Shown here: positions 1,426 to 63,216 of the stretch, in pieces
Numbering within the stretch: the first letter of the stretch is position 1
Layout of the letters: every line of letters begins with the position of its first letter
Source: Asterias rubens
Taxonomy: Eukaryota
Reading direction: 5' to 3'
DNA length: 64,000 nucleotides
Assembly: GCF_902459465.1 (NCBI RefSeq)
Contig: NW_022985693.1
Span: 1,178,001-1,242,000 of the forward strand
The notes under the pieces: model-generated
The model's database searches: none
What the model saw: the letters and a program-made list of their open reading frames with translations, nothing else
Told to the model about the DNA's origin: nothing
Program-made: the position numbers and the translations under genes

Positions 1426-1569
1426 ATGATGGCGCGGCCGGCAGATCAGCAATTGCTGGTGTTTGCAATTACTTTGTTTCTCTGCCTGTCCGTGGAAGCT
1501 TTCCATTACAAAGGAGGAAGCATTAGTTGGAGAATTGCTGGGTACAATGCTGAACAGACTGAAGTAGAC
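1426..1569 (+). CDS. Exon 1: signal peptide + mature N-terminus
   Basis: MMARPADQQLLVFAITLFLCLSVEA-FHYKGGSISWRIAGYNAEQTEVD, donor GTAAGT, phase 0; joins in frame to 12128 across a 10.6 kb intron. Confidence 0.85.
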
Positions 1570-10500: not shown

Positions 10501-13500
10501 TGACCATGCAGTTTGCAATTTGTCATTTTATATTTTAATTAAATCATTCAACCACTGTCAGTAAATTTGTCTAGAAATAACTTTACTTTAAACACAAGTT
10601 ATAGTATATAATTACTATTTATTGCTCTTTCAATGTTGAAACCTAGAAAATGTACACTTTTGAAAAAAACTTAGAAAAAAATAAACAATTTGAGGGTTGA
10701 TAATTATAATAATATAGGTATTTATATAGCGCCTTTAACAAAGATCAAAGCGCTGAACAATAAACAAGAACAATACAAAGAAACAAGAAACACAAAACAA
10801 CAAAGGACTAATGACGAGGCTGACAGAAAAAGTAGGTTTGCGATTTTTCTTGAAAATGGGAGTAGAATATGATTCCCTGATGAGTTTAGGTAACTTGTTC
10901 CATTCCTTCGGCCCAGTCAGGGAAAAAGATTTTGAGCCGCAGATCGAGAAGGCCTGTGCTCACAGAGAAGGGATTAAAACTTCATTATAAATATAAAGAC
11001 AAAAAAGAACTTATCAATGTTCAGAAATAATTGTATTTATTATAAAGAAATTTATTACAATTAAAACCTCAATGTAAATACAGAATATAATTGTGTAGCT
11101 TAAAAAAAATAATAAACCTTTAAACTAGACGCTATTCTCCTGTGTAGTATTAGCTCCCCCCTAAACACCTCCCCCATCCTCCACCCATACCCAACCCCAT
11201 CCCCAACCAGCCCAACTATCCTAAAACAACAATAAAGTTGTTTGATTTTACCCTCAGACCATAAGCTGATTACACATTGACAGTATTTCATCTAGTTTTC
11301 AACGTAGCTTCAATTTTTCTACTTTTACACCGGAAGTTGCATTATTGCGCTACTGGTTGCACAATAATGCAACATTGCATTATCTGCACTTTGCGCGGAC
11401 TGAAGTAAACCGTATGAAATAAAACTGAGAGGTATTTTTAGGAAATCAAAATGCACAAAGCACATAAAAATGTTGCACAGGAGGCCATGTAAAATACAAC
11501 AACATTCTAAAAAGCACACAAAACTACAGTTCGACATACTTGTATACAACAGAATTCAGGTATTGAAAAAAAGAGTGAAAATCACTTTCAATTTGACAAA
11601 GGTTGCACTTGGTTGGAACGATAACTGCCGGATCATACAATTCATTATTTGATGCTTGATTTCAAAGGACACTACTCAACATCTGTGACATCTGTAGGAA
11701 AATAGTTTTACTTAGTTTTTTGGGTCAGGGAAGATTATGTAGTAGGCGATACTATATTTGTTTACATGTCTACATCATGCATAGAAACCTTCAAGATTCT
11801 TACGGGGCTCGAGGATATAGATGCCAGCAGTCTATTCACACCCTCACAAACTATTAACACAAGAGGCCATGACATGAAGCTCTTCAAAAAAAGCTAAACA
11901 AAGGGCTCAATCTCAGAAAACACTTCTTCACACAACAAGTTGTAGATAACTGGAATAGACTCCCAGCCAAAGTGGTCAAAGCCAAGACAACCAATCAGTT
12001 CAAAAACAGCTTCAACAAATACCTGAATGAAAATGGATATGTGGTGTTAATTTATAAGCCTACAATATTAAAACTCCCATCAAACCTTAAGTGTAACCTT
12101 AACTGATTGTTGCCTTTCTCATTGCAGGTAGTAATCTCTCACCGAGTGTCATGGCAAGATTCAAGTTCAGACAGCGTTCGTTGCACACAAGACAGAGTTG
12201 ATACCAAAGCCCGCTATGGTGGAGGTGTTATGACCTGTCAAGGTTCTGGTACTGTTGAGTGTCCAGAAACCACCTTGGCTGGTGGTAGAGATTTTGTTTG
12301 TACAGATTATAATGTTGGTGCAGTATGGAGCTCTGGTGTCAACAGTATAACCCAACGCTTCCCTGTGCCAGGCACAGCCAGTGATTCGTACTTTGTGGGG
12401 TTAGTATTGTGTTTCATTATTTTTTTAGATTGGTATGTTCTATTTCTCTCAAACTGAACACCTTGGTAGTTTATTTAAGTTGTACTCTAGCTAGATTGAA
12501 AAGTACGTTTGTGAGATGATGTAACTTGTTGAGGTGGTTAAAACAAAGTCATATGTCAAACCCAAATTCTTTAGTTTGCCTTAAAAATGCCAGTTTTAAA
12601 ATTACTTCCTACATGTAGTCTTGGCGTTAAAAGGACATGTTGCCTTGAATCGGTCCAGTTGGTCCATGAAAAGCATTTGTAAACCATTTGTTATGAAATC
12701 GATATAGTTAGAAAGATGTTTTAACAGTAGTATATAATGATCCACACAAACATGATTCAAAATTGCATGGTTTTCCTTTTACTTTGCTAATTAACACGGT
12801 CAGCAACTTTAATGGAGTCAAAAACTTTACTCCATAAAATGGCATGCCCTGCTAGGAAAACAATGCAATTTTGTGTGGATCAGTATATTTTTATTTAAAA
12901 CATCTTTCTAACTATGTGCATTTTGTAACAAACACTTTTCATAGACTATTTCGCCCCATCCCAGGCAGCGTGTCCCTGTAAGCAGAGTATTTTCATAATT
13001 TCTAATATGGAGGATCTTGATTGTCCACTGGTAGTATTCGACCTTCACAGGTGATTCAGTGTTGTGTGAATGGGAAAGTTGTTATAACCGAGTTCCTGCA
13101 TATTCAAGGTTTGCATAATACTGGTACTTCATGACATTATTTTTGGCATGCATTTGTAAAGGAGACACATCCTATTCCACACATCAGTTCTGATACATGT
13201 AAATCTAATGGTTATGTTGTTTCCTATTTCAACAATTGGCAGGTATCAGGGATGCTGTTGGGCAGATGATATAACGGGAGGAAACTATGGTCTCATGACT
13301 GCCATCAATCTTTCACCACGGTTGGACAATGGACTGTTGAACTCCTCACCCAAAACAACAATGTTCCCAGTTGTCCGAATACAGCGTGGATGTACAGAAA
13401 ACATCAGAATCCCAAGTAACTACACAATTAGGATATTCAACTTTAAGTATTACTTACTTTCACTTCCACTAGGTCCTTGCTTCAAATCCCACCAGGGGCA

Positions 13501-53800: not shown

Positions 53801-56800
53801 GGCATAACATGTGAAGGTTAGTTTGTAAAAAAAACATTGGTCTTGGGCCTGTAGTCCAGTGTTAAATTTGAGCCCTACTTTAGATTATTTACTGTCTCAC
53901 TGTATGATATACAACTTGAAATGACTTGATTGTTTTCTCCTGTTAGCATCTCTATGTGGCAATGTGACTTGTGAGAATGATGGCAAGTGTATGTTGACGG
54001 GGATGGACTCATATGTTTGCTCTTGTAAACAAGGATATTCAGGCGACCATTGTGAACTTGGTGAGATATTTGTTGTCATATTTTTGGTAGGTTTTGACCC
54101 TATAAATAAATTGTTTCCTCTTATTTTATAATGTTTATTTGATCCCTTTTGTCCACATACCGTACCAACCTGCCTGCTGCCTCAAGCCCCTGAGGAGTCT
54201 TGATTTTTACTTATGCGATTGAAATGCATCAAACAGCCAGAGATGAAGCACAATTTTAAAGCTCAAGGGTCTACTAAAATTACACGTGGTCCCTTTAATG
54301 TTATTTGTCATTTATAATTTGTAAATTGTAATTTTCTTTATGTTTTTTACTAATTATTGCTTTTAATTTATTGTTAATCATATCCAATTTGGCCTGTAGG
54401 CCACGAAATGTAATGCTAATAAAATGAAATGAATTGAAATCAGAAAAGTTGTCCCTTCCCCAACAACACACAAACACAACACATAGTGAGCAGTTGGGTG
54501 TGTGTAGGTGAACCGTACTTTTTGTACAGTAGAACAGTAATGACAAATGTACTTGCTTTCAATATAATCTTCTGGGTGTTTTTACATCTGGAATACCGTT
54601 AATTTGAAGGATATTTTGGAAAGTTTTAGGGAAAGGAGTATTTAACACATAGAGGCGTCACTTTTTGCTTCCAAAGGTATGTGGTGAATATTTTCAATCA
54701 GTTCATTAACAACTTGTTTTTTTAGATGAAAAAACAGTGGCCAATTTATGTAACCAAATTTTACCTTACTTAAGTTGATCTGTCTTTTGTTTTCAACCTC
54801 AAAGCTTCAATATGGTAGAGGGAAACAAAACACTAGTGTAAATCGTTTGAAAATTCTTTTCATCCTCTGCAAAATAAATTAGAAAAAAAAAAGAAAAAAA
54901 ATTGTCTTAAGATTTCCAGGTACATTAGAAAATCTTGTTACTTTACGTGCCGCTTTCAAGGAGTACATGACAATGTTTACTTGTGCACAAAAAGTGCTAA
55001 AGGGCCATCATTTTTCACACTCATTTTATTATTTGTTCACAGAAACAAAGCAGTGTGGCGCCAGCGGAGATCCCCACTACCAAACGTTCGACTCTGTTCG
55101 CTTTGACTTCCAAGGAGAATGCCGATATTTTTTTGTACAAAACTGCAAAGACCAAGACCCCTACTTCGATGTCATGCAACAGAACCAGAAAGATGTTGGG
55201 AATCAGAAAGTTGCATTTACTTCAGAAATTTGGATCCATTTCTATGACACGGTAAGTTGACAAAAGGATCCTCAAAACATAAACTAAGCCAACCTCATTC
55301 CCAGGGACAATCAATCTCCATGCGTACTTTTTTCCCCAGCAGACGCTGCTCGCTCTAGTCACAGAGCAACTCTCCAACATCGTTTTCAGTGGTGTACAAT
55401 GTCTCCGTGCCATCTTTTCCTAGAAAGCCTTTCTAGATCATAACCCCTGGAAGTGAGACATTATTGGGTATTTTAGCTATTCCATTTTCCCCACATTCCC
55501 CACATTCGTCACAAATTCACTACGTTCACAAGTCATTCTCTACCTCCTTACGTTGATCGGTCAATTTTTGCTGCTCTCACACCGCGAATATGCTGGCGAA
55601 TATGCTAACAGAAGGAAATATTTGACACTCGCTCAACTTCGCAACATTCGCCGTGTCTTCGTAAGCGTTGGTAACAAATTTGGAACGTTCACAACTGTTT
55701 CCCCACCTTCTTACGAAGATCGGTCAATTTACAAACCGGTTTGTAAATTTCAGTGAATGTTGGCAACGTTGGCAAAACGTGCGTAAGCGTTGGCAACATA
55801 TGTAAAGGCATTGGCAGGCGCTGGTAAGCACTCGTAATATATTCGTAAGATATTGGTAAGGAGAGGGCCGACCGAGGACGATCGAGGATGATCGAGGGTT
55901 GTGACCGAGATGAAAATATTCACTATTCAACCGCCATTTTGGACGAATTCAACGTAAAATTTAAGTATTCATCTTCGCAAGAACATTCGCCACTCTGCGA
56001 GAGGGGCGATACGAAGCGCTTCTGTACATTCAGCGAATGTTGTGAAGACGGTAATTCGCCATCGATTTTCGTAAGCATTGGTAAGCCATTTGTACTGTTG
56101 GTAAAGCGTGCGTATTGTGCTTAATATATTGGTAAGGAGGGGTTTAGGGACAACCGAGAACTAATTCACTATCAAATCGCAACTTTTTGGCGAATTCATC
56201 GCGAATTTCAAATATCATATTCGCAAGAATATTAGCCCAAGTGTGAGAGTAGCATACGCGCCATACAGAAGCCCTACCAGCATGACCAGTGCTTGAAAGG
56301 CACCTTTGAAAGTATTTAACAAGCGTGCCTGCAGACTAGTGATTTTCGGTCAGCCAATTAACCTAGTTTTACAGCACTTGCCTTTCAAGGGTTCCTGATG
56401 CTGCTGCCCATGTTAGCAAGACTAATACTTGTCTGAACAAACAAGCAAAAGTTAAGCTGAAGTGGTTTTAAGAACTAACCAATGCTAACCAGTTCTGACT
56501 TTAATTCTGCTTGTTTCCACTATAGGAAATTGTTTTGTATAGAGAAAAGAGGACTACTGTCAATGGACAGGAAATCATGCCACCATTTAGTCAAGGAGAA
56601 CTATTTCAAATCAACCTTAGGGGTGACAGAGTGGTAAGTTAAATATTGATGTAAGACCATTGCAATTACAGTTATGACTTTAATGTGTTATTTGGGGATC
56701 TTTCTTTACATATTAATTGTTCTCAAGAGCATATTACTCATGTACTTTTGACTTCAATTGAAGGTAAAATGAAGACCTGAATAGGGAAACAAGCCCATTG

Positions 56801-59800
56801 TGCACCATTTCTCGTTAAGCAATAGTTTAACCAAAATCTGGTTTGCCTTTTGTTAAAGCCATTGGACCCTTTCGGTAAACAGTGTTGTCCAAGGCCCACA
56901 CTTTGTGTACCACAACTTCTATATCAAATAACAAACCTGTGAAAATTTAGGCTCAATCGGTCATCGGAGTCGGGAGAAAACAACGGAAAAACCCACCCTT
57001 GTTTCCGCGCGTTTCGCCGTGTCATGACATGTGTTTCAAATAAATCCGTAATTCTCGTTAACGAGAATTTTTATTGTTTTGCTGTTTTCTCAAAAAGTAC
57101 AGCATTTCATGGAATAATATTTCAAGAGAAGTCTTTCACCATTGCCTTCTGTAAACCCTGTAAGTTATTTGTAAATCTGTGAACTTTTTTTTTTTTTTCT
57201 GAACCGAAAGGGTCCAATGGCTTTAACGAGATTCAAGATTTGTTGGCAAACTCCCAGTGAACTAGAATCTGCATTATAGTTATATGGAAAGGGATCCTAC
57301 GAGTAATTGGAAAAGGGATCCAAACAAACCTGCCAGAAAGAGCAAAGTTAAATAGTGCCCTCCCACAGCCACTTCCAAAGCACCTATTTTTTGTGCCATA
57401 TTTTAGCTCATTACAAGTATCATTTTTCAGTATCATGTGCGACCTTAGCTAAAATTAAAAAATTGTTGATCTCGGTTAGTTTTAGGAAAGAAACTTTAGC
57501 TTATTTTCGGAGATGGTATTCACTCAATAGCATTGAAGTAACAACATAAAGTATATTTATATATTTTCCTCTTATTTTTGTCTTGAAATTGAAAAAATTG
57601 GCATTGGTAAGCCATTTGTACTGTTGGTAAAGCGTGCGTATTGTGCTTAATATATTGGTAAGGAGGGGTTTAGGGACAACCGCGAACTAATTCACTATCA
57701 AATCGCAACTTTTTGGCAAATTCATCGCGAATTTCAAATATCAAATATCTTGAAAATTGAAAAAACTGTCATCTACATGGTTATCACTTTTGTTATGCAT
57801 TAAGGTTGTTTTCAAATCTCTCTCTCTCTCTCTGTCCTTTTGTGCAGATTGTCACCACAAACTTCACTCTAGAGGTATCATGGGATGGAAAAGCCAGCGT
57901 TAATGCTCAACTCTCTACTCAGTTTGCTAATGAAACGTGTGGTCTCTGTGGAAATATGGACGCCTCGGAAGAAAATGAGTTAGCATCACCTGGAAATGAT
58001 GAGGTAAGCCTGCCAAAAAGAATTGTATGTGTTTTGTAACTTGAACTCACTGTTTGTTTCAATCCTATACAAATATACATTCATAAATACCCCAGACAGT
58101 TTCTTTACTCCTATTGGTGGAGAGTGCGTCACGTGGGTGTGCATAAACCTTTTGTTAATGCACACTAGAGCTCTGTTTATAACATGCTGGGTTGCCGTGT
58201 CGGGCGCGCAAGATTATCACGCGGAACGCAATTCATAGCTATAGTAAAAGCGTGTAATCTAAGCGCGGGCGTGCGTCATGTAAGCGCGCGCGCTCACACA
58301 CAACCCACGCACATCGAACAGATTCTTCACAAAGTTTTGGGAAAAAATATTTCAAACCTCGAATTTTCAATTGTTAAAGTGTCTATAACTGTATTTTTTA
58401 ATGTTTTTTAACAAAAGGGCATTTATGAATGGGAATAAAAGAGTAGTGACTTGTTCTTAAACGTCCGTTTAAAACCTTGCAGGGTCAGCGGACGTGCGAT
58501 AAAGGCCAACGTACGTTGAAGAACTCGTCGCTACCCCTTTATTCCCTTAATAAAAAACAACTTGTAAAAATTTCAAAAGGTGGTAGTGTTTTTGAGATAT
58601 TCCTGAAAGTCTGGAGCGGTTAATAATAATTTGTTGAGATAAAAAGTGATCTCTTTTTCCATAACCGCAGTACTTTGAAGTGGAAAGTTTCTGAAAATGC
58701 ATTATACTATCCTAAGCTACTGTACTTACAATTTAAATTTCAGAGGCATTAAGCTAGGCAAAGCTATGTTTTGTTTATTGATGGCTTTTACCTTTAATAA
58801 GTATAATTATATGGACATCAGACTTATGAAAAACTCTTGTTGTTTTCCTTCAGGAGGATCCCAATGTATTTGGTAATTTCTGGGTGGCTAACCCTGAAGA
58901 ATGTTCATCCATTGAACCTCCGGGTGAAAACGTAGAATGTCCAGATGATGAGCAAGAGAAATTCAGATCGATCTGTGAACCATTGGTTGATACAAGAGGT
59001 AAGTTTAGTTGGATAGTAATCATAGGCAAATTACAGCGTCTTAATGGAGCCTTAAGATTGGGAGTAATTAGTCGTGTCATTGAGTTCATGTATATGGTTA
59101 GCGATAATGCCATTTGTATTTTTATAGTAGTATGAAGATTTGTTTATTCAAGATTTGTTTCTTTTTGGGGGGGGGGGGTGGGGTTGAATGGGTTTATGCA
59201 TTGAGGACACAGCTACTTTCCAACATCACTATATGATTTTACGCTTACTAATAACTAACTTCAATTCAATTCCATTTTTGTTGTCCATAAAATAGAAATT
59301 TGCTTTTTCAAACATGCTCATAACAGTTAACATACTTTTGGAATTATAGAATTACCAGGGATGCCAGTTTTCCAGCTATTGCCGGAATTCCGGCTTTTTC
59401 AAATTTTCCCCGATTTTTTTCCGGCGCTCTGTGTTTCATCTGGCCGAAAAAAAAAATCTTATTGAAAACAGATTTCCGGCGTTCCGTTTTTCATCTGGCC
59501 AGAGAAAATATATAAAATAATATCTGCCGTCAACTCGCTGTCAACTCGTCAACTCAACCACTTCCAAGATGGCAGGTATGAACTAGTCTTGACCTAAGGC
59601 CTCAGCGATCAACTAACATAAATTGCAGTACATACTACACATGCAGTACCAATCATTCACGCCTTGAGGCAAGACTATTCCAAATGCAGGAAAGCGCCCT
59701 CTGTTGTCCACTTTGTACAGGGCTGTGAAAAAGCAAGAAATGGCGACCGATGGCGACCGGCGGCTTTGTAGCTTAGAGATATTTTTCACGATCATCAAAA

Positions 59801-62800
59801 AAAATTCTTACAATCGAAATGTAGCCTTAAACTTTTCAAATTCTCTTTTAGCTTATACTGTATAGTTTTATGCATCTTTTGTGGATTTTAAATTTATTTT
59901 GGAGGAGTTGACGGCGAGTTGGTGGCACCAAGCGAGTTGACGGTAAGTTGTTGGACCCTCCCAATAATGTGCATTGCTGACACCGATCGAAAAAATTTAA
60001 TTGCAAAAGAAGTTTTTTATACAACCGATCCTCACATTTCATGGTTGAAAAAAAGTACTTAAAGGCAGAAATAAGAGGGTAAGATCGTCCAAAAATGAAA
60101 AAAAATAAAAAAATCTTGATGTTTTTTCTGATTTTTTTTTTTTTTTTCTGTTTTGAAATTTGTGATAATTATATAAAAACGGAAAATTCAAGACTAAAAT
60201 CAGACTATGCCTGCCTTTTTTTTGCAAGGGGGGGGGGTCAGAATTGTCTTTTTCTTTATGTTTCATCTAAAAAGTGCTGTTATGTTTCTTATAGTTTTTT
60301 TGGGTCTGACGGAGGGGGGGGGGCGGGGCGTGACCCCTTTTCCTTCAAAAAAAAATTTCAGGCTCTGAAGGAAAGAGCCACTGGCATCCCTGAATTACAA
60401 ATTGTTGTAAAGTATAACAATATTTATGTAATTAAAAACATTTCCAAAATCTACTTCATAAAGGACAGTAACAAGAAAGAACAGGAAAATATGAACAGAA
60501 TGTGGTAGAAACGAGTTTAAATGTCTATTGGTTCTGCACTTCTCAGCTTCCAGTTTCTGTTACTTATGTGTTTCATTGATTAAATTTACATCAATTTTAT
60601 TCCTGATGCATTACATGTATTATACACTTAAGTTGTTTTTGTCTTTGTATTGAATGTTAAATCATGATTACGTGGATATTTGATGTCTGGTGATATTTTG
60701 TGTTATTGCAGGACCATTCAGAAGGTGTCCTGATGACATAACAGACAGTGCTTTTGAAAACTGTGTGTATGACGGGTGTGCCCTTCGACCAGACACAACC
60801 ACCATCTGTGAAACATTTGCAGACACAATGAAACGTTGTCAGCGCATTGGCATTGAAATTGACAAATGGAGGAGAGATGACTTCTGTCGTAAGTTTTTAT
60901 TAAAAGCCGTTTATAACTGTTTGTTTACATCTCGTATTGCATTCTCCTCTACCTGCCAGGCCCCTTATGGACATGGGGCAACCCTGTTTCAGCCCCAGGA
61001 GTAGGTGACAATGTGCCCATGGTGGTCAATAGCCCAATTCAGTTAATTGTAGCCCTTGGCTTGGCCATCCGTGGCCTTGTGATGTAAGGCGATCTGTCAT
61101 ATAAAAGGTTGCAAATTAGCTAGGATATTTGTGCTGCAAGCTTTGCCGTCAAGAATATTATGAAATTAAAATTGTAAACATGTCTTTATTCTCTTGTTAA
61201 TCTTTGATTCATATATGTTTCTCAGTGACTTCAGTAATCACATATATTAATAATAGCAATGACAATTTATATAGCGCCCATCCATGAAACATGCTCCTTG
61301 GCGCTCAGCGATTAAAATGAAACCCTATTAAAATCCACACAGTTTTAAAACCTTAGAAAAAATATAACTAAAATGTAATTAAATGTATTAGTAGATGTTA
61401 CATTTGCATCGGTGATAAAGAATATTATGTTTTGGTTTTTACCCATATACACCGATGTTGTAGCACTGTATACTCATATACGGTGCTACATCATCGGTGT
61501 ATATGGGTAAAAACCAAAAATTCATATAATTAAATGTAATTAAATGCAGTACACACATCTTGTGTCAGCATTGTAAACGCTTATTTTCTTGTGTTTATTC
61601 TTGCAGCATACCAGTGCCCCCCTCAGTCTACCTATAAGGTATGTGCCAATGTATGCCAGAGACGTTGTGGTGAAGCGGAGCATCCAGACAACTTTGAATG
61701 TCCTCATCCATGTGAAGAAGGGTGTGAATGTAATGAGGACCATGTATTAGACAGTGATGGCAACTGTAAACCAATAGAAGAGTGTGGCTGTTTTGATGAC
61801 GGTTTTTACCATCTGGTAAGTCTTATCAATTTGTGTTTTGGAATAATAGTATGCACTATCTATCATCATCAATAATTAGGATTTGAGACTTTGCATTGTG
61901 GAAATACGATATATAGAAAGGTTTGCGGTAACACCATGTAATGACTATCTTGGATGGGTTCTGAAAAGAACCGTTGGTTTCAACTTGACGTTTCGATCAG
62001 TATGCTCTGATCGTCTTCAGTTGAAACCAACGGTTCTTTTCAGAACCACCCCAACTCATCAGAGATAGTCATTACATGGTGTTACCGCAAACCTTTCTAT
62101 ATCATCAATAATGTATCTTATTTCATCTTATTTTATCTTATTGCATTTTGCAAATAAATCTATCAATAATGTCTGTCTTTAAACCTTGTTTCTGCGTTAG
62201 CTGATTCCATTGAAGCTCAGTTTTATAATAGACTGAACATACCTGAGTTGAATGGGAAAGCTCAAGCTGAGGTCTTATTTGACGAGTTGAACTAATGGTC
62301 ACTCTTATTGGTCATTGTTATCTTGCTATAGAGTGGAGTACCATACATGCGTGAAGGTTGTATGGAACGTTGTACTTGTGAGAATAGAGAGATAAACTGT
62401 GAAGGAGTCATGTGCCATCATAATGCCTCATGTGCCCTAGAAGATGGAGACATTGGATGCCACTGTGATGAGGGATTCCTAGGAAATGGAATGGAGTGCA
62501 TGAGTTAGTATCATACTAGAATCATATTAATCAATGGCCTTACTCTAGTGTAGTAGGTAAAGTATACCATTGGTTTTCAGAACTGTTTGGTTGTTTCATT
62601 TCATTTTTAAAAGGTGGTAGTTTTTCGTGAATATGTCCACGCAGGAAGAACTATCCTTGACAGGAATACACAACCTGAGGAACCCGACTGCAATAATGCT
62701 TCTCAGATATGAATTTTGGGGCATTAAATTTATACCTTATTACATATCCACATTACTTCAAAGTGAAACTTTTCTCAAAATGCCTCCACTATGAGAGCTA

Positions 62801-63216
62801 CTGTAGGCTTCTAACCAAAAGTTTGTATTGCCGTGAATTTTAGTAGTTGTACGTACTGTACCTTCCTTTTTACAGGTTTTTAAATCCTAGAAAAAACAAG
62901 CTGTGAAAAAAAAAATGAGATCAAAGAGGATTTTTTTTGTTCTTTCGAGTGGAGTTATTCTACTCCGTTTATTCAACAAACGACAACATTCATCACTTAA
63001 TCAACATTAATAAAGAAGCGCAACTGCTATTACATACAAGTATATAATATTAGAGCTTTGTTACAATTGGTTAAACTGATATATTTTTTGTTTCATTAGA
63101 TGACCCTTGTGACCCTAACCCATGTGAAAATGACGGGCGATGTTCTCCAACCCCAGATATGATGTCTTATATGTGCACTTGCATTGGGCGATGGGCAGGG
63201 CAGAATTGTGATGAAG
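1426..63216 (+). CDS. Giant secreted mosaic protein (58 exons in window, 3'-incomplete): Sib/integrin-beta-like N-terminus, Ig-like, EGFx5, TIL, CUB, then 5x[VWD-C8-TIL-TILa-EGF]; FCGBP/zonadhesin-like
   Basis: Manual splice reconstruction. All 58 exons are bounded by AG/GT, exon lengths fit the phases, and the frame is open for about 3170 aa. Hydrophobic signal peptide; GDPH, CGLCG, SPNYP and EGF Cys patterns. Last exon ends in phase 1 with no stop. Confidence 0.9.
4313..5370. mobile_element. Cluster of small palindromic MITEs (GGGTGCGTTCGTTTAGCTTCCCTGGGTCGACCCC termini)
   Basis: Complete copies at about 4999-5120 and 5209-5370, half copy at 4313-4346. Confidence 0.7.
5817..6356. mobile_element. 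540-bp TIR element with 9-bp TSD (MULE-like)
   Basis: TIR TAGTTGCGATAAC/GTTATCGCAACTA; GGTAGACTA at 5808-5816 and 6357-6365. Confidence 0.8.
6880..9037. mobile_element. Decayed 2.2-kb DNA transposon, 4-bp TSD (Sola-like)
   Basis: TIR GGGCAATTCCAC/GTGGAATTGCCC; AAAT on both sides; repeated internal GTCCATGAC motifs. Confidence 0.7.
9229..11402. mobile_element. 2.2-kb TIR element with perfect 47-bp TIRs and 4-bp TSD
   Basis: 9229-9275 is the exact reverse complement of 11356-11402; AAGT on both sides. Confidence 0.85.
10701..10960 (-). mobile_element. L2-type LINE 3' end fragment nested in the TIR element
   Basis: Minus strand reads ...GPKEWNKLPKLIRES...FKK, then a stem-loop tail (CAGCGCTTTG...AGGCGCTATATAAATAC) and TTA-rich end. 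Confidence 0.6.
11781..12050 (+). mobile_element. CR1-type LINE ORF2 C-terminal fragment
   Basis: IETFKILTGLEDID...TRGHDMKLFK / RKHFFTQQVVDNWNRLP...FKN, with a frameshift. Confidence 0.75.
12128..12399 (+). CDS. Exon 2: N-terminal Sib-like region
   Basis: ttgcag acceptor; VVISHRVSWQD...CTDYNVGAVWSSG...YFVG; phase 0-2. Confidence 0.85.
12627..12940. mobile_element. Truncated TTAA-type MITE remnant
   Basis: Starts TTAA AAGGACATGTTGCCTTG; right end not resolved. Confidence 0.4.
13243..13415 (+). CDS. Exon 3: N-terminal Sib-like region
   Basis: YQGCCW...NSSPKTTMFPVVRIQRGC...IRIP; phase 2-1. Confidence 0.85.
13472..13665 (+). mobile_element. tRNA-derived SINE fragment; related copy at about 37240-37505
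   Basis: Shared CTTC(A/G)AATCCCACCAGGGGCAC..ATGTGGATT..GGGTTTTCCTCCCA block with B-box-like motif. Confidence 0.6.
13782..13909 (+). CDS. Exon 4: N-terminal Sib-like region
   Basis: LDADRDYVSCHLA...CHSLCDFRVPNIELNPD; phase 1-0. Confidence 0.8.
14027..14304 (+). CDS. Exon 5: N-terminal Sib-like region
   Basis: GCILQ...YAVALVVQD...PLSSVPLQFVL...CAPRPTFVPDTP; donor GTAAGT at 14305; phase 0-2. Confidence 0.85.
14530..14685 (+). CDS. Exon 6: N-terminal beta-rich region (not in ORF track)
   Basis: ctacag acceptor; ITDIVTLSPLNTRKTEL...SMCFYGNQTNG; phase 2-2. Confidence 0.8.
15212..15252 (+). CDS. Exon 7: 41-nt exon
   Basis: ttgcag acceptor; ISSEIRCITVAFD; GTAAGT donor; phase 2-1 bridges exons 6 and 8. 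Confidence 0.75.
15310..15348 (-). ncRNA. Minimal type I hammerhead-like motif (Penelope pLTR type, U3:A8 variant)
   Basis: Minus strand GCCT-UCGAGAAA-GACUCU gcu AGGGUC-GAAA-CGUC-AGGC: stem I, stem II, GAAA and ACGU palindrome with GUC site. Confidence 0.5.
16099..16196 (+). CDS. Exon 8: Ig-like module, first part
   Basis: VTAPQIVLDAVFPNVGEAVDPNFEFFQIVFNQE; phase 1-0. Confidence 0.8.
16575..16845 (+). CDS. Exon 9: Ig-like module, second part
   Basis: VKRPLQDRFISLF...LDPGEYYFVADEGAV...WHFSVT; phase 0-1. Confidence 0.85.
17003..17131 (+). CDS. Exon 10: EGF 1
   Basis: DPCLTPELCQNGGTC...CLCSTDFKGANCE; phase 1-1. Confidence 0.9.
17678..17800 (+). CDS. Exon 11: EGF 2
   Basis: NPCSVSADVCQNDGVC...CDCLPNFVGESCE; phase 1-1. 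Confidence 0.9.
18099..18830. mobile_element. TTAA-target TIR element (Kolobok-like), family B
   Basis: TTAA|AGTCACCTGGAA...TTCCAGGTGACT|TTAA. Confidence 0.75.
18852..19231. mobile_element. Kolobok-like MITE family A, inverted relative to 229-592
   Basis: TTAA|AGACAGTG...CACTGCCT|TTAA; internal sequence is the reverse complement of the first copy. Confidence 0.75.
19446..19562 (+). CDS. Exon 12: EGF 3
   Basis: NPCLSAPCLNEAVC...CSCASGFMGTHCE; phase 1-1. Confidence 0.9.
19664..20400 (-). mobile_element. 5'-truncated R4/Dong-clade non-LTR retrotransposon (CCHC finger + restriction-like endonuclease)
   Basis: ORF 19747-20352: CRMC..ETVFHIVSEC, ILWDFNIQTD, RRPDVVLLDK, IDIAVP, KIEKYQDL; (TAA)n on both flanks. 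Confidence 0.85.
20655..20820 (-). mobile_element. tRNA-derived SINE; related + strand copies at about 26686-26790 and 41030-41400
   Basis: Minus strand GTGTCATGGCCGAGCGGTTAAGAGC head, then TCCTTGAGCAAGA..ATAAATGGGTAC core. Confidence 0.6.
20908..21030 (+). CDS. Exon 13: EGF 4
   Basis: DPCLASPSVCQNNGVC...CTCVGAFIGKDCS; phase 1-1. Confidence 0.9.
21249..21377 (+). CDS. Exon 14: EGF 5
   Basis: DPCSVPMLCENGATC...CECAEGFMGRNCR; phase 1-1. Confidence 0.9.
21466..21800. mobile_element. Truncated Kolobok-like MITE family A
   Basis: TTAA AGGCACTG start; body homologous to 18852-19231. Confidence 0.65.
21858..22063 (+). CDS. Exon 15: TIL (no preceding VWD/C8)
   Basis: CPDSASYSSCIAPCGPTC...CTEGCVCNEG...CIPASECGC; phase 1-0. 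Confidence 0.9.
22744..22930 (+). CDS. Exon 16: TILa + EGF-like
   Basis: NCTERCSC...CADDATC...CMCNEGFEGNGMEC; phase 0-1. Confidence 0.9.
23062..23370. mobile_element. Diverged TTAA-type MITE (relatives at about 58560-58760 and 62560-62850)
   Basis: Shared TGAAGTGAAA..TTTCTCAAAATGCATTATACTAT..AAGCTGCTGTA block. Confidence 0.45.
23483..23851 (+). CDS. Exon 17: CUB domain
   Basis: FSSPNYPENY...FHIEEIRDALYVG...MWMYFITD...GW; phase 1-1. Confidence 0.85.
24482..24595 (+). CDS. Exon 18: EGF
   Basis: DPCWEDPCMNDGQC...CVCVGGWRGQNCE; phase 1-1. Confidence 0.9.
25117..25495 (-). mobile_element. RTE-clade LINE 3' fragment with (AAGC)n tail
   Basis: Minus strand CYTRLLRTALNIHW...RRMRFAGHCYRS...HGKRKPG.PALTYTDILK.DTGL. 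Confidence 0.8.
25745..25956 (+). CDS. Exon 19: VWD1 part a
   Basis: [26 protein letters not shown]; phase 1-0. Confidence 0.9.
26424..26528 (+). CDS. Exon 20: VWD1 part b
   Basis: EIGMNREMSLTIDGLQLYLPVIRPGVHITFRGNSI; phase 0-0. Confidence 0.85.
26800..27325. mobile_element. Non-autonomous repeat ending in a 160-bp hairpin (Crypton-like, tentative); relative at about 58090-58550
   Basis: Shared CAGACAGTTTC..CCTATTGGTGGAGAG head and TTTATGAATGGGAAT..ATTCCCTTA end; inverted arms 27160-27221 and 27260-27321. Confidence 0.5.
27666..27818 (+). CDS. Exon 21: VWD1 part c
   Basis: LEVEWTG...TCGLCGNMD; phase 0-0. Confidence 0.9.
28173..28320 (+). CDS. Exon 22: VWD1-C8 linker
   Basis: AAEFGNSWKYNDC...HPC...FFCSVI; phase 0-1. 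Confidence 0.9.
28477..28653 (+). CDS. Exon 23: C8 (cassette 1)
   Basis: GPFRNCH...FYQDCVYDSC...WRTEEFC; phase 1-1. Confidence 0.9.
28704..28778. mobile_element. Left end only of a family A Kolobok-like MITE
   Basis: TTAA AGGCAGTGGACACTGTTGGTAATTACTC, cut off at GAGTAATG. Confidence 0.65.
28779..29622. mobile_element. About 840-bp element with imperfect inverted ends and internal tandem repeats
   Basis: CGGTTCT..ACCCGGTTCCAA at left mirrors TTGGAACCGGGT..AGAACCG at right. Confidence 0.45.
29277..29352. repeat. 16-bp tandem repeat (TGCACTACGGACGTAC) x4.75
   Basis: Perfect units counted directly. Confidence 0.95.
30484..30695 (+). CDS. Exon 24: TIL (cassette 1)
   Basis: CPEHSSYNPCMTACP...CVEGCEC; phase 1-0. 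Confidence 0.9.
31307..31478 (+). CDS. Exon 25: TILa/EGF-like (cassette 1)
   Basis: DCAFECEC...CHCNVGYIGDGKDC; phase 0-1. Confidence 0.9.
31643..31759 (+). CDS. Exon 26: EGF (cassette 1)
   Basis: DPCASSPCNHGLC...CRCLRGTQGRFCD; phase 1-1. Confidence 0.9.
31784..32172. mobile_element. Kolobok-like MITE family A
   Basis: TTAA|AGGTATTGGACAC...GTGTCCAGTGCCT|TTAA. Confidence 0.75.
32194..32455. repeat. Degenerate minisatellite of about 35 bp (TTGATAGTTTTTGACTGAC core), about 7-8 units
   Basis: Recurring ATTGATAGTTTTT(A/G)ACTGA motif. Confidence 0.8.
32517..32776 (-). mobile_element. Diverged copy of the 260-bp tRNA-core repeat with terminal duplication
   Basis: Homologous to 37896-38410; has an extra copy (about 35 bp) of the unit end at its left. 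Confidence 0.7.
33460..33674 (+). CDS. Exon 27: VWD2 part a
   Basis: [26 protein letters not shown]; phase 1-0. Confidence 0.9.
34062..34166 (+). CDS. Exon 28: VWD2 part b
   Basis: VIGMNSKRKIMVNG...VKRGKNV; phase 0-0. Confidence 0.85.
34361..34501 (+). CDS. Exon 29: VWD2 part c
   Basis: TDFGLEVRW...TCGLGGSWDGNSDND; phase 0-0. Confidence 0.9.
34619..34757 (+). CDS. Exon 30: VWD2-C8 linker
   Basis: AEMFGNRWKINDEEC...LNC...DLCQVF; phase 0-1. Confidence 0.85.
35887..36066 (+). CDS. Exon 31: C8 (cassette 2)
   Basis: AFERC...FYDSCVYDLC...WRTRQFC; phase 1-1. Confidence 0.9.
36475..36671 (+). CDS. Exon 32: TIL (cassette 2)
   Basis: CPEHSSYTQCASACPGTC...CVEGCEC; phase 1-0. Confidence 0.9.
37562..37736 (+). 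CDS. Exon 33: TILa/EGF-like (cassette 2)
   Basis: DCGQRCTC...CAVNAIC...GCYCNDGF; phase 0-1. Confidence 0.9.
37896..38410 (-). mobile_element. Head-to-tail dimer of a 260-bp repeat with an internal tRNA-like segment
   Basis: Two near-identical units; minus strand GGTAGTCTAGTTGGT (A box) ... GGTTCGAATCCC (B box). Confidence 0.8.
38575..38694 (+). CDS. Exon 34: EGF (cassette 2)
   Basis: DPCDSGEEHCSGNGKC...CECNQGWSGEACD; phase 1-1. Confidence 0.9.
38776..38853. repeat. (TCAA)n microsatellite; shorter run at 38706-38725
   Basis: Seen directly. Confidence 0.95.
39315..39526 (+). CDS. Exon 35: VWD3 part a
   Basis: [26 protein letters not shown]; phase 1-0. Confidence 0.9.
40248..40355 (+). CDS. 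Exon 36: VWD3 part b
   Basis: VIELLQDKEVRVNG...ISGKRV; phase 0-0. Confidence 0.85.
40561..40716 (+). CDS. Exon 37: VWD3 part c
   Basis: TNFTLVVAWDG...TQGLCGTYDG; phase 0-0. Confidence 0.9.
41437..41587 (+). CDS. Exon 38: VWD3-C8 linker
   Basis: EFGNRWVYGEC...KPC...HLCEII; phase 0-1. Confidence 0.9.
42706..42885 (+). CDS. Exon 39: C8 (cassette 3)
   Basis: GPFRDCH...NCRYDLC...WRTEEFC; phase 1-1. Confidence 0.9.
43033..43256 (+). CDS. Exon 40: TIL (cassette 3)
   Basis: CPEGSSYTPCASGCPETC...CVEGCDC; phase 1-0. Confidence 0.9.
43842..44019 (+). CDS. Exon 41: TILa/EGF-like (cassette 3)
   Basis: GCEERCEC...CHRNAEC...CHCRQPLIGDG; phase 0-1. Confidence 0.9.
44635..44748 (+). CDS. Exon 42: EGF (cassette 3)
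   Basis: SPCFSDPCENNGTC...CQCTELFMGERCS; phase 1-1. Confidence 0.9.
44936..45141 (+). CDS. Exon 43: VWD4 part a
   Basis: LCYVYGSLHFITFD...FQGECQY; phase 1-0. Confidence 0.9.
45555..45659 (+). CDS. Exon 44: VWD4 part b
   Basis: VITLGRENQCYVDG...RFSGFNL; phase 0-0. Confidence 0.85.
45718..45865. repeat. 148-bp segment duplicated at 46846-46993
   Basis: Same orientation, about 6-7 substitutions. Confidence 0.9.
46334..46468 (+). CDS. Exon 45: VWD4 part c
   Basis: TDFGLTVTYDG...LCGMCGNYDG; phase 0-0. Confidence 0.9.
46998..47268 (+). mobile_element. L2-type LINE 3' fragment with (ATT)n tail
   Basis: HGIAPVYLQSL...RNLRSS...SRSFQYAAVQLWNSFP, 3' stem-loop GCGCAT..ATGCGC, then (ATT)n. Confidence 0.8.
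47373..47526. mobile_element. Small imperfect palindromic MITE
   Basis: AGACG..CCGCCATCCTTGATG mirrors CATCAAAGATGGCGG..CGTCT. Confidence 0.55.
48006..48159 (+). CDS. Exon 46: VWD4-C8 linker
   Basis: AAEIGNSFLYGDGC...NPC...EFCNAL; phase 0-1. Confidence 0.9.
48841..50375. mobile_element. Helentron/DINE-1-like non-autonomous element with internal tandem array of about 300-bp units
   Basis: GGTGTTCGG (48846) with local hairpin, CCGAACACC (50363), T-rich flanks; units start at 48946, 49236, 49551. Confidence 0.6.
50421..50593. mobile_element. Small TIR MITE (relative at about 36235-36335)
   Basis: CGATTTCACGAAAC / GTTTGGTGAAATCG; internal TCCTAAC/TTAGGA motifs. Confidence 0.5.
50752..50931 (+). 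CDS. Exon 47: C8 (cassette 4)
   Basis: GPLKPC...LCLHDAC...WRTIDYC; phase 1-1. Confidence 0.9.
51363..51675. mobile_element. Truncated Kolobok-like MITE family A
   Basis: TTAA AGGGAAGG start; body homologous to family A. Confidence 0.6.
51816..52021 (+). CDS. Exon 48: TIL (cassette 4, 8-Cys variant)
   Basis: DCQQGSKFNVQTSGCPQTC...EACEC...CVPAEECGC; phase 1-0. Confidence 0.9.
52050..52523. repeat. 57-bp minisatellite, 8 full units plus a partial
   Basis: CATATTGTACAAACACCATTGACCCCTCAGATACTCTCATTGTATATCTGTAACTTC units. Confidence 0.95.
52523..53545 (-). mobile_element. Penelope-like element fragment (RT C-terminus + GIY-YIG endonuclease), truncated at both ends
   Basis: WWRYIDDIFFIW, then (1-nt frameshift) TIKFT..FLD..KPTD..YLH..SCHP..; NLIYLISC..C..QYIGET..LKRRF..H. 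Confidence 0.9.
53645..53816 (+). CDS. Exon 49: TILa/EGF-like (cassette 4)
   Basis: DCTHVCEC...CDDNAEC...CKCSDGFIGNG; phase 0-1. Confidence 0.9.
53947..54060 (+). CDS. Exon 50: EGF (cassette 4)
   Basis: LCGNVTCENDGKC...CSCKQGYSGDHCE; phase 1-1. Confidence 0.9.
55043..55251 (+). CDS. Exon 51: VWD5 part a
   Basis: QCGASGDPHYQTFD...FQGECRY; phase 1-0. Confidence 0.9.
55570..56253. mobile_element. About 680-bp TIR element rich in GCGAAT/ATTCGC motifs
   Basis: TGCTGCTCTCACAC / GTGTGAGAGTAGCA ends; no clear TSD. Confidence 0.55.
56526..56633 (+). CDS. Exon 52: VWD5 part b (contains RGD)
   Basis: EIVLYREKRTTVNG...INLRGDRV; phase 0-0. Confidence 0.85.
56853..57226. mobile_element. Kolobok-like MITE, family C
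   Basis: TTAA|AGCCATTGGACCCTTTCGGT...ACCGAAAGGGTCCAATGGCT|TTAA, perfect 20-bp TIR. Confidence 0.85.
57601..57743. repeat. 143-bp copy of 56075-56217
   Basis: 2 substitutions; flanked by an imperfect direct repeat of about 18 bp. Confidence 0.9.
57848..58003 (+). CDS. Exon 53: VWD5 part c
   Basis: TNFTLEVSWDG...TCGLCGNMD; phase 0-0. Confidence 0.9.
58854..58998 (+). CDS. Exon 54: VWD5-C8 linker
   Basis: NVFGNFWVANPEEC...VEC...SICEPL; phase 0-1. Confidence 0.9.
59356..60392. mobile_element. hAT-like non-autonomous element, apparent 6-bp TSD
   Basis: CAGGGATGCCAG / CTGGCATCCCTG; AATTAC on both sides. Confidence 0.7.
60712..60888 (+). CDS. Exon 55: C8 (cassette 5)
   Basis: GPFRRC...FENCVYDGC...WRRDDFC; phase 1-1. 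Confidence 0.9.
61386..61531. mobile_element. Fold-back fragment of the 260-bp repeat with 15-bp TSD
   Basis: 43-bp arms 61430-61472 and 61477-61519; AAATGTAATTAAATG at 61371-61385 and 61532-61546. Confidence 0.8.
61607..61815 (+). CDS. Exon 56: TIL (cassette 5)
   Basis: CPPQSTYKVCANVCQRRC...CEEGCEC; phase 1-0. Confidence 0.9.
61877..62100 (-). mobile_element. Short insertion with long inverted arms around a hammerhead-like core; 12-bp TSD (Penelope-type, tentative)
   Basis: ATCATCAATAAT at 61865-61876 and 62101-62112; minus strand CUGAAGA-c-GAUCAG agcaua CUGAUC-GAAA-CGUC at 62020-61987. Confidence 0.6.
62332..62503 (+). CDS. Exon 57: TILa/EGF-like (cassette 5)
   Basis: GCMERCTC...CHHNASC...CHCDEGFLGNGMEC; phase 0-1. 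Confidence 0.9.
63100..63216 (+). CDS. Exon 58: EGF (cassette 5); gene continues beyond window
   Basis: DPCDPNPCENDGRC...CTCIGRWAGQNCD; phase 1-1. Confidence 0.9.

What the first reader, a model, noticed from the sequence alone, without database searches (positions are those of the whole stretch)
1426..63216. Chimeric giant secreted protein: Sib-like/Ig head on an EGF-CUB neck and five FCGBP-type VWD-C8-TIL-EGF cassettes
Seen: an open, phase-consistent 58-exon frame of about 3170 aa, still unfinished. Established: VWD-C8-TIL arrays define FCGBP, zonadhesin, tectorin and gel-forming mucins. Inference: I know of no characterised member with this head, a CUB, and a complete EGF exon closing every cassette. 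It may be an undescribed lineage-specific adhesive, mucus or egg-coat protein class. The 60-aa ORF track misses many of these exons, so automatic annotation may split the gene.
Basis: partly seen in the sequence, partly recalled or inferred. Interest (0 to 1): 0.75.

Follow-up and report, generated by a model that had tools for sequence, protein, structure and literature searches.

The report
Giant VWD-repeat mosaic protein gene
This is a real, transcribed 58-exon piece of a roughly 19-kb mRNA for a giant cysteine-rich extracellular protein: an unnamed head, EGF/TIL/CUB modules and five FCGBP-like VWD-C8-TIL-TILa-EGF units; it is an unusual arrangement of ordinary building blocks rather than a new kind of protein.

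Summary

Spliced RNA contigs from three runs confirm every junction of exons 1-12, including 1569/12128 and a 41-nt mini-exon. One contig is 19,200 nt long, so about half of the mRNA lies beyond the window.

Pfam confirms:
- six plain EGF modules
- an orphan TIL-TILa pair
- one CUB
- five collinear VWD-C8-TIL-TILa-EGF cassettes, 32-40% identical, with 35 invariant Cys columns

The nearest solved relative is FCGBP. Four VWDs keep the GDPH self-cleavage motif. Cassette 2 lacks the cysteine that tethers FCGBP fragments after cleavage.

The roughly 500-aa head matches no Pfam family and no solved structure. Its "Sib-like" look rests on a 19-residue motif shared with bacterial DUF7507/DUF11 repeats.

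The architecture is right. "Secreted" and "new protein class" are not shown: other notes of this scan (not checked here) describe the downstream half as membrane-anchored.

It is a new variant of the VWD-C8-TIL mosaic family, of moderate to low interest. Sibling notes of this scan already cover parts of this same gene.

The parts
1426..1569 (+). Exon 1: ATG just after an in-frame TAA, signal peptide (about 25 aa), start of the head
   Evidence: Its last 30 nt are the loose end before 12128 in RNA contigs of X1 and X2.
12128..12399 (+). Exon 2: head N-domain, holds the CP.TTLA.G....CT motif
   Evidence: RNA joint. Only two relatives found, P0001 and P0007. Motif match to DUF7507.
13243..13415 (+). 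Exon 3: head
   Evidence: RNA joints. No Pfam hit.
13782..13909 (+). Exon 4: head
   Evidence: RNA joints.
14027..14304 (+). Exon 5: head, Ig/cadherin-like by language-model look-alikes
   Evidence: RNA joints put the start at 14027. Atlas score 0.95 to unnamed rotifer clusters.
14530..14685 (+). Exon 6: head
   Evidence: RNA joints.
15212..15252 (+). Exon 7: 41-nt mini-exon of the head
   Evidence: Both joints seen in three runs.
16099..16196 (+). Exon 8: head, start of the last Ig-like domain
   Evidence: RNA joints.
16575..16845 (+). Exon 9: head, Big_5/SbsA-like Ig domain (lead only)
   Evidence: RNA joints. Atlas 0.87-0.91 to Big_5 clusters. No Pfam or PDB hit.
17003..17131 (+). Exon 10: EGF 1, phase 1-1
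   Evidence: Pfam EGF 6.6e-7. RNA joints.
17678..17800 (+). Exon 11: EGF 2
   Evidence: RNA joint. Alignment.
19446..19562 (+). Exon 12: EGF 3
   Evidence: The loose end after 17801 in X2 reads into this exon..
20908..21030 (+). Exon 13: EGF 4
21249..21377 (+). Exon 14: EGF 5
21858..22063 (+). Exon 15: orphan TIL
   Evidence: Pfam TIL 5.5e-12.
22744..22930 (+). Exon 16: TILa with EGF_3-like end
   Evidence: Pfam TILa 3.5e-6, EGF_3 4.5e-8.
23483..23851 (+). Exon 17: CUB, one exon, phase 1-1
   Evidence: Pfam CUB 9.1e-7.
24482..24595 (+). Exon 18: EGF after the CUB, closest to the cassette-closing EGFs
   Evidence: 54% identical to the cassette 5 closer.
25745..25956 (+). Cassette 1 exon A: VWD N-part, GDPH at 25768-25779
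   Evidence: Pfam VWD 9.3e-16. FCGBP is the best PDB hit.
26424..26528 (+). Cassette 1 exon B: VWD middle
   Evidence: tblastn with the cassette 4 exon B..
27666..27818 (+). Cassette 1 exon C: VWD C-part, CGLCG at 27753-27767
   Evidence: Pfam VWD 1.2e-11..
28173..28320 (+). Cassette 1 exon D: linker and start of C8
28477..28653 (+). Cassette 1 exon E: C8
   Evidence: Pfam C8 8.7e-18.
30484..30695 (+). Cassette 1 exon F: TIL
   Evidence: Pfam TIL 5.9e-14.
31307..31478 (+). Cassette 1 exon G: TILa
   Evidence: Pfam TILa 2e-6.
31643..31759 (+). Cassette 1 exon H: closing EGF
   Evidence: Pfam EGF 6.2e-5.
33460..33674 (+). Cassette 2 exon A: VWD N-part, GDPH at 33483-33494
   Evidence: Pfam VWD 1.8e-16. 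Alignment to FCGBP.
34062..34166 (+). Cassette 2 exon B: VWD middle
34361..34501 (+). Cassette 2 exon C: VWD C-part, CGLGG at 34451-34465 (second Cys replaced by Gly)
   Evidence: Pfam VWD 8.6e-9. Seven FCGBP VWDs aligned there read CGLCG and the eighth CGACG, so all keep the second Cys..
34619..34757 (+). Cassette 2 exon D
35887..36066 (+). Cassette 2 exon E: C8
   Evidence: Pfam C8 1.9e-12.
36475..36671 (+). Cassette 2 exon F: TIL
   Evidence: Pfam TIL 3.6e-14.
37562..37736 (+). Cassette 2 exon G: TILa
38575..38694 (+). Cassette 2 exon H: closing EGF
39315..39526 (+). Cassette 3 exon A: VWD N-part, GDPH at 39338-39349
   Evidence: Pfam VWD 4.3e-13.
40248..40355 (+). Cassette 3 exon B
40561..40716 (+). 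Cassette 3 exon C: VWD C-part, QGLCG (first Cys lost together with its presumed partner)
   Evidence: Pfam VWD 3.8e-15..
41437..41587 (+). Cassette 3 exon D
42706..42885 (+). Cassette 3 exon E: C8
   Evidence: Pfam C8 2.7e-18.
43033..43256 (+). Cassette 3 exon F: TIL
   Evidence: Pfam TIL 2.6e-13.
43842..44019 (+). Cassette 3 exon G: TILa
44635..44748 (+). Cassette 3 exon H: closing EGF
44936..45141 (+). Cassette 4 exon A: VWD N-part, GSLH at 44959-44970 in place of GDPH
   Evidence: Pfam VWD 3.9e-13..
45555..45659 (+). Cassette 4 exon B
46334..46468 (+). Cassette 4 exon C: VWD C-part, CGMCG
   Evidence: Pfam VWD 8.2e-10.
48006..48159 (+). Cassette 4 exon D
50752..50931 (+). Cassette 4 exon E: C8, the most diverged copy
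   Evidence: Pfam C8 2.8e-6.
51816..52021 (+). Cassette 4 exon F: TIL, two Cys columns lost
   Evidence: Pfam TIL 1.6e-6..
53645..53816 (+). Cassette 4 exon G: TILa
53947..54060 (+). Cassette 4 exon H: closing EGF
55043..55251 (+). Cassette 5 exon A: VWD N-part, GDPH at 55066-55077
   Evidence: Pfam VWD 1.4e-12.
56526..56633 (+). Cassette 5 exon B
57848..58003 (+). Cassette 5 exon C: VWD C-part, CGLCG
   Evidence: Pfam VWD 2.1e-12.
58854..58998 (+). Cassette 5 exon D
60712..60888 (+). Cassette 5 exon E: C8
   Evidence: Pfam C8 9.5e-13.
61607..61815 (+). Cassette 5 exon F: TIL
   Evidence: Pfam TIL 7.2e-11.
62332..62503 (+). Cassette 5 exon G: TILa
63100..63216 (+). Cassette 5 exon H: closing EGF; ends in phase 1 at a GT donor, so the gene goes on
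   Evidence: The 19.2-kb contig implies about 9.6 kb more mRNA.

Best explanation
One gene, transcribed as an mRNA of about 19 kb, encodes a giant (about 6,000 aa) cysteine-rich extracellular mosaic protein. The window holds its first 3,171 residues. In order, these are: a signal peptide; a head of about 500 aa made of an unnamed N-domain and probably three Ig-like beta-sandwich domains; five non-calcium-binding EGF modules; a TIL-TILa pair; one CUB; one EGF; and five tandem 8-exon cassettes of VWD-C8-TIL-TILa-EGF.

The cassettes arose by duplication of the whole 8-exon unit and are closest to the D assemblies of FCGBP. By analogy with FCGBP, the most likely mechanism is as follows. The four VWDs that keep GDPH cut themselves between Asp and Pro in the ER. 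The chain then stays together through the one disulfide per VWD that links the Cys five residues before the Asp to the second Cys of CGLCG. The result is a long, disulfide-stapled, segmented rod in which each rigid D assembly is spaced by an EGF. This rod holds the binding head (and the CUB) far from whatever anchors the C-terminal half.

Cassette 2 lacks that tether cysteine. A head-neck-cassette 1 fragment of about 1,436 aa would therefore be held only non-covalently and could be shed.

Shown here: the gene structure, transcription, domain content and motifs. Inferred: cleavage, tethering, the rod-like presentation of the head, and any role in adhesion, mucus or matrix.
For: - Gene model of 58 exons with no stop.
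- Spliced RNA contigs in three runs join exons 1-12, and one contig is 19,200 nt long.
- The same runs hold the cassette 5 region.
- Pfam finds VWD, C8, TIL, TILa, EGF and CUB on the expected exons of all cassettes.
- The cassettes are collinear, 32-40% identical, with 35 invariant Cys columns and the same exon phases.
- FCGBP is the best solved relative of the VWD exons, and FCGBP chain 8r0t_C starts at the residue aligned to the Pro of GDPH.
- FCGBP fragments are held by a single disulfide, C472-C611 (PMC8267560). In 8rde_A the Cys five before the Asp is at 56 and the CGLCG cysteines are at 192 and 195. Since 195-56 = 139 = 611-472, the tether is the second Cys.
- Cassette 2 reads CGLGG.
- Cassette 3 lost the first CGLCG Cys together with one mid-VWD Cys, which fits the other pairing.
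- No hydrophobic stretch of 20 or more residues beyond the signal peptide's own hydrophobic core.
Against: - Junctions of exons 13-58 were not seen directly in RNA.
- Cleavage at GDPH and the disulfide map are carried over from FCGBP, not tested here.
- Other non-covalent or covalent contacts could hold cassette 2 together.
- The C-terminal half, and so the choice between anchored and secreted, was not seen.
- The head could not be folded, so its Ig-like nature is a lead only.
- Raw RNA-seq run X10 of the same species label shows almost no reads on the exons, so expression is tissue-restricted and the tissue is unknown.
Confidence: 0.72

Rival explanations
1. Two genes were merged by the reader: a small head-EGF gene and a separate FCGBP-like VWD gene downstream.
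For: Junctions of exons 13-58 were not observed directly. Only exons 1-12 are joined in the pieces shown.
Against: The frame stays open through all 58 exons, with phase-1 EGF exons on both sides of every boundary. No terminal exon or stop follows the neck. The same RNA runs hold the cassette 5 region.
Confidence: 0.03
2. It is a secreted adhesive or mucus component of the sea-star footprint-protein kind (Sfp1/Sfp2-like): released from gland cells, cut at GDPH into subunits, and forming a cohesive meshwork.
For: Sfp1 and Sfp2 of Asterias rubens also combine VWD-C8-TIL with EGF and self-cleave. Sea-urchin and flatworm adhesives share these domains. The protein has a signal peptide and is 8.6% Cys. 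Word depth is high in some RNA runs.
Against: None of the described Sfps has this head, a CUB, or five EGF-closed cassettes. No galactose-binding lectin, discoidin or FAMeT domain was found in the window. Another note of this scan calls the downstream half membrane-anchored (s1-170825, not checked). No tissue data could be reached.
Confidence: 0.2
3. It is a zonadhesin-like type I membrane protein: a cell-surface adhesion or recognition molecule (for example on gametes or epithelia) whose VWD array is a stalk and whose head is the ligand-binding end.
For: Zonadhesin likewise puts non-VWD binding domains at the N-terminus of a VWD-C8-TIL array that ends in an EGF and a membrane helix (my own knowledge). 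Notes s1-170825 and s1-170800 describe a membrane anchor and a C-type lectin further on (not checked).
Against: No MAM or mucin-like region was found in the window. The anchor was not seen by me. This reading is compatible with the best explanation and sharpens it rather than competing with it.
Confidence: 0.35
4. The locus is a decaying pseudogene or an assembly duplication of cassettes.
For: Cassette 4 is degenerate (GSLH, weak C8 and TIL scores, two TIL Cys columns lost).
Against: No stop in 3,171 codons. It is transcribed and correctly spliced at high depth. The cassettes are only 32-40% identical, far too diverged to be assembly copies.
Confidence: 0.01

Closest known systems
FCGBP (IgGFc-binding protein)
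   Same: Tandem VWD-C8-TIL-TILa assemblies. GDPH sits at the same position in most VWDs. CGLCG motif. It is the best solved relative of the VWD exons.
   Different: No FCGBP_N / IgGFc_binding domain was found in the head. FCGBP has no CUB and no canonical EGF after each assembly ('EGF' is absent from the texts of PMC4948705 and PMC8267560). [quoted passage not shown]
Zonadhesin
   Same: A mosaic with other binding domains ahead of a VWD-C8-TIL array. EGF modules. Possibly a membrane anchor (unchecked note).
   Different: No MAM domains or mucin-like region in the window. Zonadhesin has one EGF near the membrane, not one per cassette (my own knowledge).
Sea star footprint proteins Sfp1 / Sfp2 (Asterias rubens)
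   Same: Large Cys-rich proteins with VWD-C8-TIL plus EGF, cut autocatalytically into subunits.
   Different: Sfp1/2 carry galactose-binding lectin, discoidin and FAMeT domains. None of these was found here. They are not described with this head, a CUB or repeated EGF-closed cassettes.
Alpha-tectorin and gel-forming mucins / VWF
   Same: D assemblies (VWD-C8-TIL-E) with the same cysteine framework. They come next after FCGBP in the PDB hit list.
   Different: No NIDO, PTS, VWC or CTCK domains in the window. A ZP domain could not be looked for because the C-terminal half lies outside the window.
Dictyostelium Sib proteins and bacterial DUF11/DUF7507 repeat surface proteins
   Same: A 19-residue motif of head exon 2 (CP.TTLA.G....CT) matches the consensus of DUF7507 repeats. 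8 of the 11 longer hits of the representative search are such repeat proteins.
   Different: hhalign probability is only 18.6% over 19 columns. No VWA domain was found. The C-terminal features of Sib proteins (glycine-rich helix, NPXY) lie outside anything I could see.

Membership tests
VWD-C8-TIL (D assembly) mosaic proteins | VWD followed by C8 and TIL/TILa with the conserved cysteine framework | tested here: met
   Pfam hits above the curated cut-offs on the exons of all five cassettes. 35 invariant Cys columns.
FCGBP | N-terminal FCGBP_N / IgGFc_binding domain (Lang 2016) | tested here: not met
   No Pfam hit at E<=1 on any head exon. Caveat: the exons were searched one by one, because the spliced head has no reference.
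FCGBP | Repeated VWD-C8-TIL units with GDPH in most VWDs | tested here: met
   Five units, GDPH in four of them. FCGBP is the top PDB relative.
FCGBP | Autocatalytic Asp-Pro cleavage with fragments held by one disulfide per VWD | not testable with these tools
   Motifs are present. The tether Cys is absent in cassette 2. Cleavage itself needs protein chemistry.
Zonadhesin | N-terminal MAM domains and a mucin-like region | tested here: not met
   No MAM hit on the head exons. No Ser/Thr/Pro-rich exon in the model.
Zonadhesin | C-terminal EGF, transmembrane helix and short tail | not testable with these tools
   The C-terminal half lies outside the window. There are only unchecked notes.
Sea star footprint protein Sfp1/Sfp2 | VWD-C8-TIL together with galactose-binding lectin, discoidin (FA58C) and FAMeT domains | tested here: not met
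   None of these domains appears in the Pfam scans of the window exons. The architecture is as described in PMC9382459.
Dictyostelium Sib (integrin-beta-like) | Extracellular VWA domain | tested here: not met
   No VWA hit in any scanned exon. Feature as given in PMC9197732.
Dictyostelium Sib (integrin-beta-like) | Glycine-rich transmembrane helix and NPXY motifs in the tail | not testable with these tools
   Outside the window.
DUF7507/DUF11 bacterial Ig-like repeat | Full-length match to the ~100-aa repeat profile | tested here: not met
   hhalign aligns only 19 columns, probability 18.6%. No Pfam hit on exon 2.
Gel-forming mucins | PTS (mucin) domain and C-terminal cystine knot | tested here: inconclusive
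   Absent from the first 3,171 aa. The rest was not seen.

The most novel reading that the evidence does not exclude
The head is an unrecognised animal N-terminal binding module: an unnamed N-domain with a bacterial-repeat-like motif plus Ig-like domains, with exon-level relatives in at least two other organisms and look-alikes in rotifers. The protein would then be a self-cutting tether with a designed weak link. Cassette 2 cleaves at GDPH but has no tether disulfide, so a head fragment of about 1,436 aa is held only non-covalently and can be shed or pulled off. That would be a release mechanism of the kind temporary adhesion needs.
Probability: 0.12. Interest if true: 0.6.

Novelty: new variant of a known kind. 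Interest (0 to 1): 0.3.

Why it matters
If the model is right, this is one of the largest VWD-repeat proteins of an echinoderm, and it has a domain order not described for FCGBP, zonadhesin, tectorin, mucins or the sea-star footprint proteins.

It offers a natural comparison for two open questions about FCGBP-type proteins: what GDPH self-cleavage is for, and what the single tether disulfide does. Here one cassette keeps the cut site but has lost the tether, and another has lost the cut site.

It also marks about 500 residues of head sequence with no family assignment, which structural prediction on the spliced protein could place quickly.

For genome annotation, the 41-nt mini-exon, the 10.5-kb first intron and 39 exons under 60 aa make this gene easy to split or truncate.

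Against this, giant shuffled mosaics of EGF, CUB, TIL and VWD modules are common in invertebrate deuterostomes, so a specialist would not be very surprised.

Tried and rejected
- **Full-length homologues through the head.** The representative search with exon 2 found two single-exon fragments and repeat proteins only. The profile search found the same two plus the window's own fragment. The search with exon 5 found only the window's own fragment. The metagenome locus scan was blank. P0001's contig had no DNA available, and P0007's contig is 1.2 kb.
- **Pfam on head exons.** Nothing at E<=1.
- **PDB sequence search with head exons 2, 5 and 9.** Nothing better than E = 0.5.
- **AlphaFold2 on exon 2 (3-sequence alignment) and on exon 9.** Mean pLDDT was 36.8 and 45.6, so no fold search was run.
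- **The spliced head or whole protein.** That step was left out.
- **First DP models.** They contained false exons (5270-5296, 39315-39338, 41166-41189, 45909-45972, 52604-52828, 60960-61004) and a short exon 5. These were corrected from paralogy and RNA joints.
- **Exon 52604-52828.** Rejected: it lies next to a 57-bp tandem repeat, overlaps an antisense 344-aa ORF, and is not needed for phase.
- **Peptide strings of the protein.** Not found in any paper text. The footprint-protein paper has no supplements held.
- **DUF7507 homology of the head.** Rejected as a family assignment.
- **Pseudogene and assembly-duplication readings.** Rejected.

Full report
**What is there**

The window is AT-rich animal DNA with no assembly gap. 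On the + strand, many short stop-free stretches read as EGF, TIL, C8 and VWD pieces.

I chained GT/AG sites with a codon log-odds score and phase bookkeeping, starting from the ATG at 1426. I then corrected the chain in three ways:
- tblastn of each exon against the window, and reading of the gaps, recovered missing VWD exons of cassettes 1-4.
- RNA joints fixed the start of exon 5.
- One false exon inside a repeat-filled intron was dropped.

The final model has 58 exons, 9,514 nt and 3,171 codons, with no stop. All 57 introns are GT..AG, range from 117 to 10,558 nt and have a median of 620 nt. The last exon ends in phase 1 at a donor. From composition alone, an open frame of that length has a chance of about 4e-87.

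**Transcript evidence**

Three RNA runs (X1 and X3 from one sample, X2 from another label and year) hold about the exon fraction of 12000-17300. Laid on 12000-17999, their contigs show all nine joints between exons 2 and 11 at GT..AG borders, including both sides of the 41-nt exon 15212-15252.
- The loose end before 12128 in X1 is identical to window 1540-1569. In X2 it differs by one letter.
- The loose end after 17801 in X2 reads into the exon at 19446.
- The X2 contig is 19,200 nt long and the head starts at its position 198. That places 53 nt of 5'UTR before the ATG and leaves about 17.3 kb after exon 11. The window accounts for 7.7 kb of this.

About half of the mRNA, and so a protein of roughly 6,000 aa, lies beyond the window.

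The same runs hold 54000-63999 at 0.23, 0.21 and 0.11 of the sampled words, near the exon fraction. A raw RNA-seq run of the same species label has almost no reads on the exons, so expression is restricted to some tissues or stages. The run labels are coded, so I could not learn which.

I had one reads call of 6 kb, so junctions of exons 13-58 were not seen directly.

**Anatomy**

| Residues | Content |
|---|---|
| 1-25 | Typical signal peptide; an in-frame TAA sits just before the ATG |
| 26-521 | Head, nine exons |
| 522-728 | Five EGF modules, one exon each, all phase 1-1 |
| 729-859 | TIL and TILa |
| 860-982 | One CUB in a single phase 1-1 exon |
| 983-1020 | One EGF |
| 1021-3171 | Five cassettes of 424-441 aa |

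Each cassette has eight exons: three for VWD, two for the linker and C8, then one each for TIL, TILa and EGF.

The cassettes are collinear, 32-40% identical, share 35 invariant Cys columns, and have the same exon borders and phases. The 8-exon unit, closing EGF included, was therefore the unit of duplication.

The EGF after the CUB is closest to the cassette-closing EGFs (54% to that of cassette 5). The orphan TIL-TILa is 33-37% identical to those of the cassettes. The stretch TIL-TILa-CUB-EGF thus looks like a cassette without VWD-C8 and with a CUB inserted.

None of the eleven EGFs has the calcium-binding consensus. A few carry O-glucose or O-fucose consensus sites.

The window part is 8.6% Cys. 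Beyond the signal peptide's own hydrophobic core, it has no hydrophobic stretch of 20 or more residues.

**Relation to FCGBP and the likely mechanism**

The VWD exons hit FCGBP structures far better than mucins or VWF. FCGBP chain 8r0t_C begins at the residue aligned to the Pro of GDPH, which is the mark of its self-cleavage.

Cassettes 1, 2, 3 and 5 keep GDPH. Cassette 4 reads GSLH.

In FCGBP, all GDPH sites are cut in the ER and each pair of fragments is held by one disulfide, C472-C611 in vWD1 (PMC8267560). In chain 8rde_A, the Cys five residues before the Asp is at 56 and the CGLCG cysteines are at 192 and 195. The spacing 195-56 = 139 equals 611-472, so the tether is the second Cys of CGLCG.

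Cassette 2 has Gly at that place (CGLGG, 34451-34465). Seven of the eight FCGBP VWDs aligned there read CGLCG and the eighth reads CGACG, so all eight keep that cysteine.

Cassette 3 has lost the first CGLCG Cys together with one mid-VWD Cys that the other four cassettes keep. That is what loss of a whole disulfide looks like, and it fits the other known pairing of this motif in VWF (my own knowledge).

If the FCGBP chemistry holds, the protein is a chain of disulfide-stapled segments. It would have one break, after residue 1461, that is held only non-covalently and leaves one unpaired Cys. This point was raised by a sibling note (s1-178672). I checked its sequence basis but not the chemistry.

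**The head**

No Pfam family matches any head exon, and no solved structure does by sequence.

In 1.84 billion representatives, exon 2 has two true relatives. Both are single-exon fragments, 56% and 36% identical. The one whose DNA I could read has its acceptor at the same codon and a donor in the same phase at the matching place, in a much more AT-rich genome. This exon therefore exists in other animals.

Eight of the other eleven hits are bacterial-type DUF7507/DUF11 repeat proteins. A profile-profile comparison aligns only 19 columns, at 18.6% probability. It is not enough for homology.

Language-model look-alikes point to Big_5/SbsA Ig-like domains for exon 9 (0.87-0.91). For exon 5 they point to unnamed, mostly rotifer clusters (0.95, 207 shared features), with He_PIG/Big_9 families further down. 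These are leads.

Single-exon AlphaFold models were useless. The spliced head has no reference, so I could not fold or scan it whole.

**Comparison with known families**
- By the definition of Lang et al. (FCGBP_N plus VWD-C8-TIL), this is not FCGBP. That paper found no echinoderm protein with both.
- It lacks the MAM and mucin parts of zonadhesin, the NIDO of tectorin, the PTS of mucins in the part seen, and the lectin, discoidin and FAMeT domains of sea-star Sfp1/Sfp2.
- Other agents of this scan name the genome as Asterias rubens. I did not check this. None of the footprint proteins described for that species has this architecture.
- Peptide strings of the protein occur in no paper text.

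**Verdict**

"Secreted" and "new class" are unproven.

It is a new variant of the VWD-C8-TIL mosaic family. Its points of interest are an unassigned head, an EGF spacer in every repeat, and natural variants of the cleavage and tether motifs. Interest is moderate to low (0.3).

Sibling notes of this scan (s1-178707, s1-178672, s1-170825, s1-170800) describe parts of the same gene.

Noticed in passing
window 37889-38416 (tRNA-like at 37980-38053 and 38240-38313, minus strand): Two identical tRNA-Ser(AGA)-like sequences sit in a 260-bp tandem duplication inside the intron between exons 33 and 34. They are either real tRNA genes or a tRNA-derived SINE.
   Followed up: partly
window 62027-62072 (+): Rfam histone 3' stem-loop hit just at the gathering score (34.5 against 34) inside the intron between exons 56 and 57. 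Probably chance or repeat-borne.
   Followed up: no
window 52050-53512: A 57-bp tandem repeat (8.3 copies, 93% alike) lies next to an antisense 344-aa ORF with a weak GIY-YIG match. This may be Penelope-like retroelement debris in the intron between exons 48 and 49. It created a false exon in the first models.
   Followed up: partly
window 19747-20352 (-): A 200-aa antisense ORF with a weak zf-RVT match: retrotransposon debris in the intron between exons 12 and 13.
   Followed up: no
window 14600-14800 and 15200-15400: Very high depth on both strands in all RNA runs (up to about 20,000 word depth; about 300 raw reads per strand), with many loose ends and odd joints. These are abundantly transcribed repeats in the head introns, one of them within about 35 nt of the 41-nt mini-exon.
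   Followed up: no
L001 578-834: A distant relative of head exon 2 (36% identical) in an AT-rich Logan contig has its acceptor at the same codon and a donor in the same phase. The head exon is therefore older than this lineage.
   Followed up: partly
window 39315-39526 and 40561-40716 (cassette 3): Cassette 3 has lost two cysteines together, the first of CGLCG and one mid-VWD Cys. This looks like loss of one whole disulfide.
   Followed up: partly
window 2291-2322 and 38775-38854: A run of 32 G in the first intron, and a (TCAA)20 microsatellite after exon 34.
   Followed up: no
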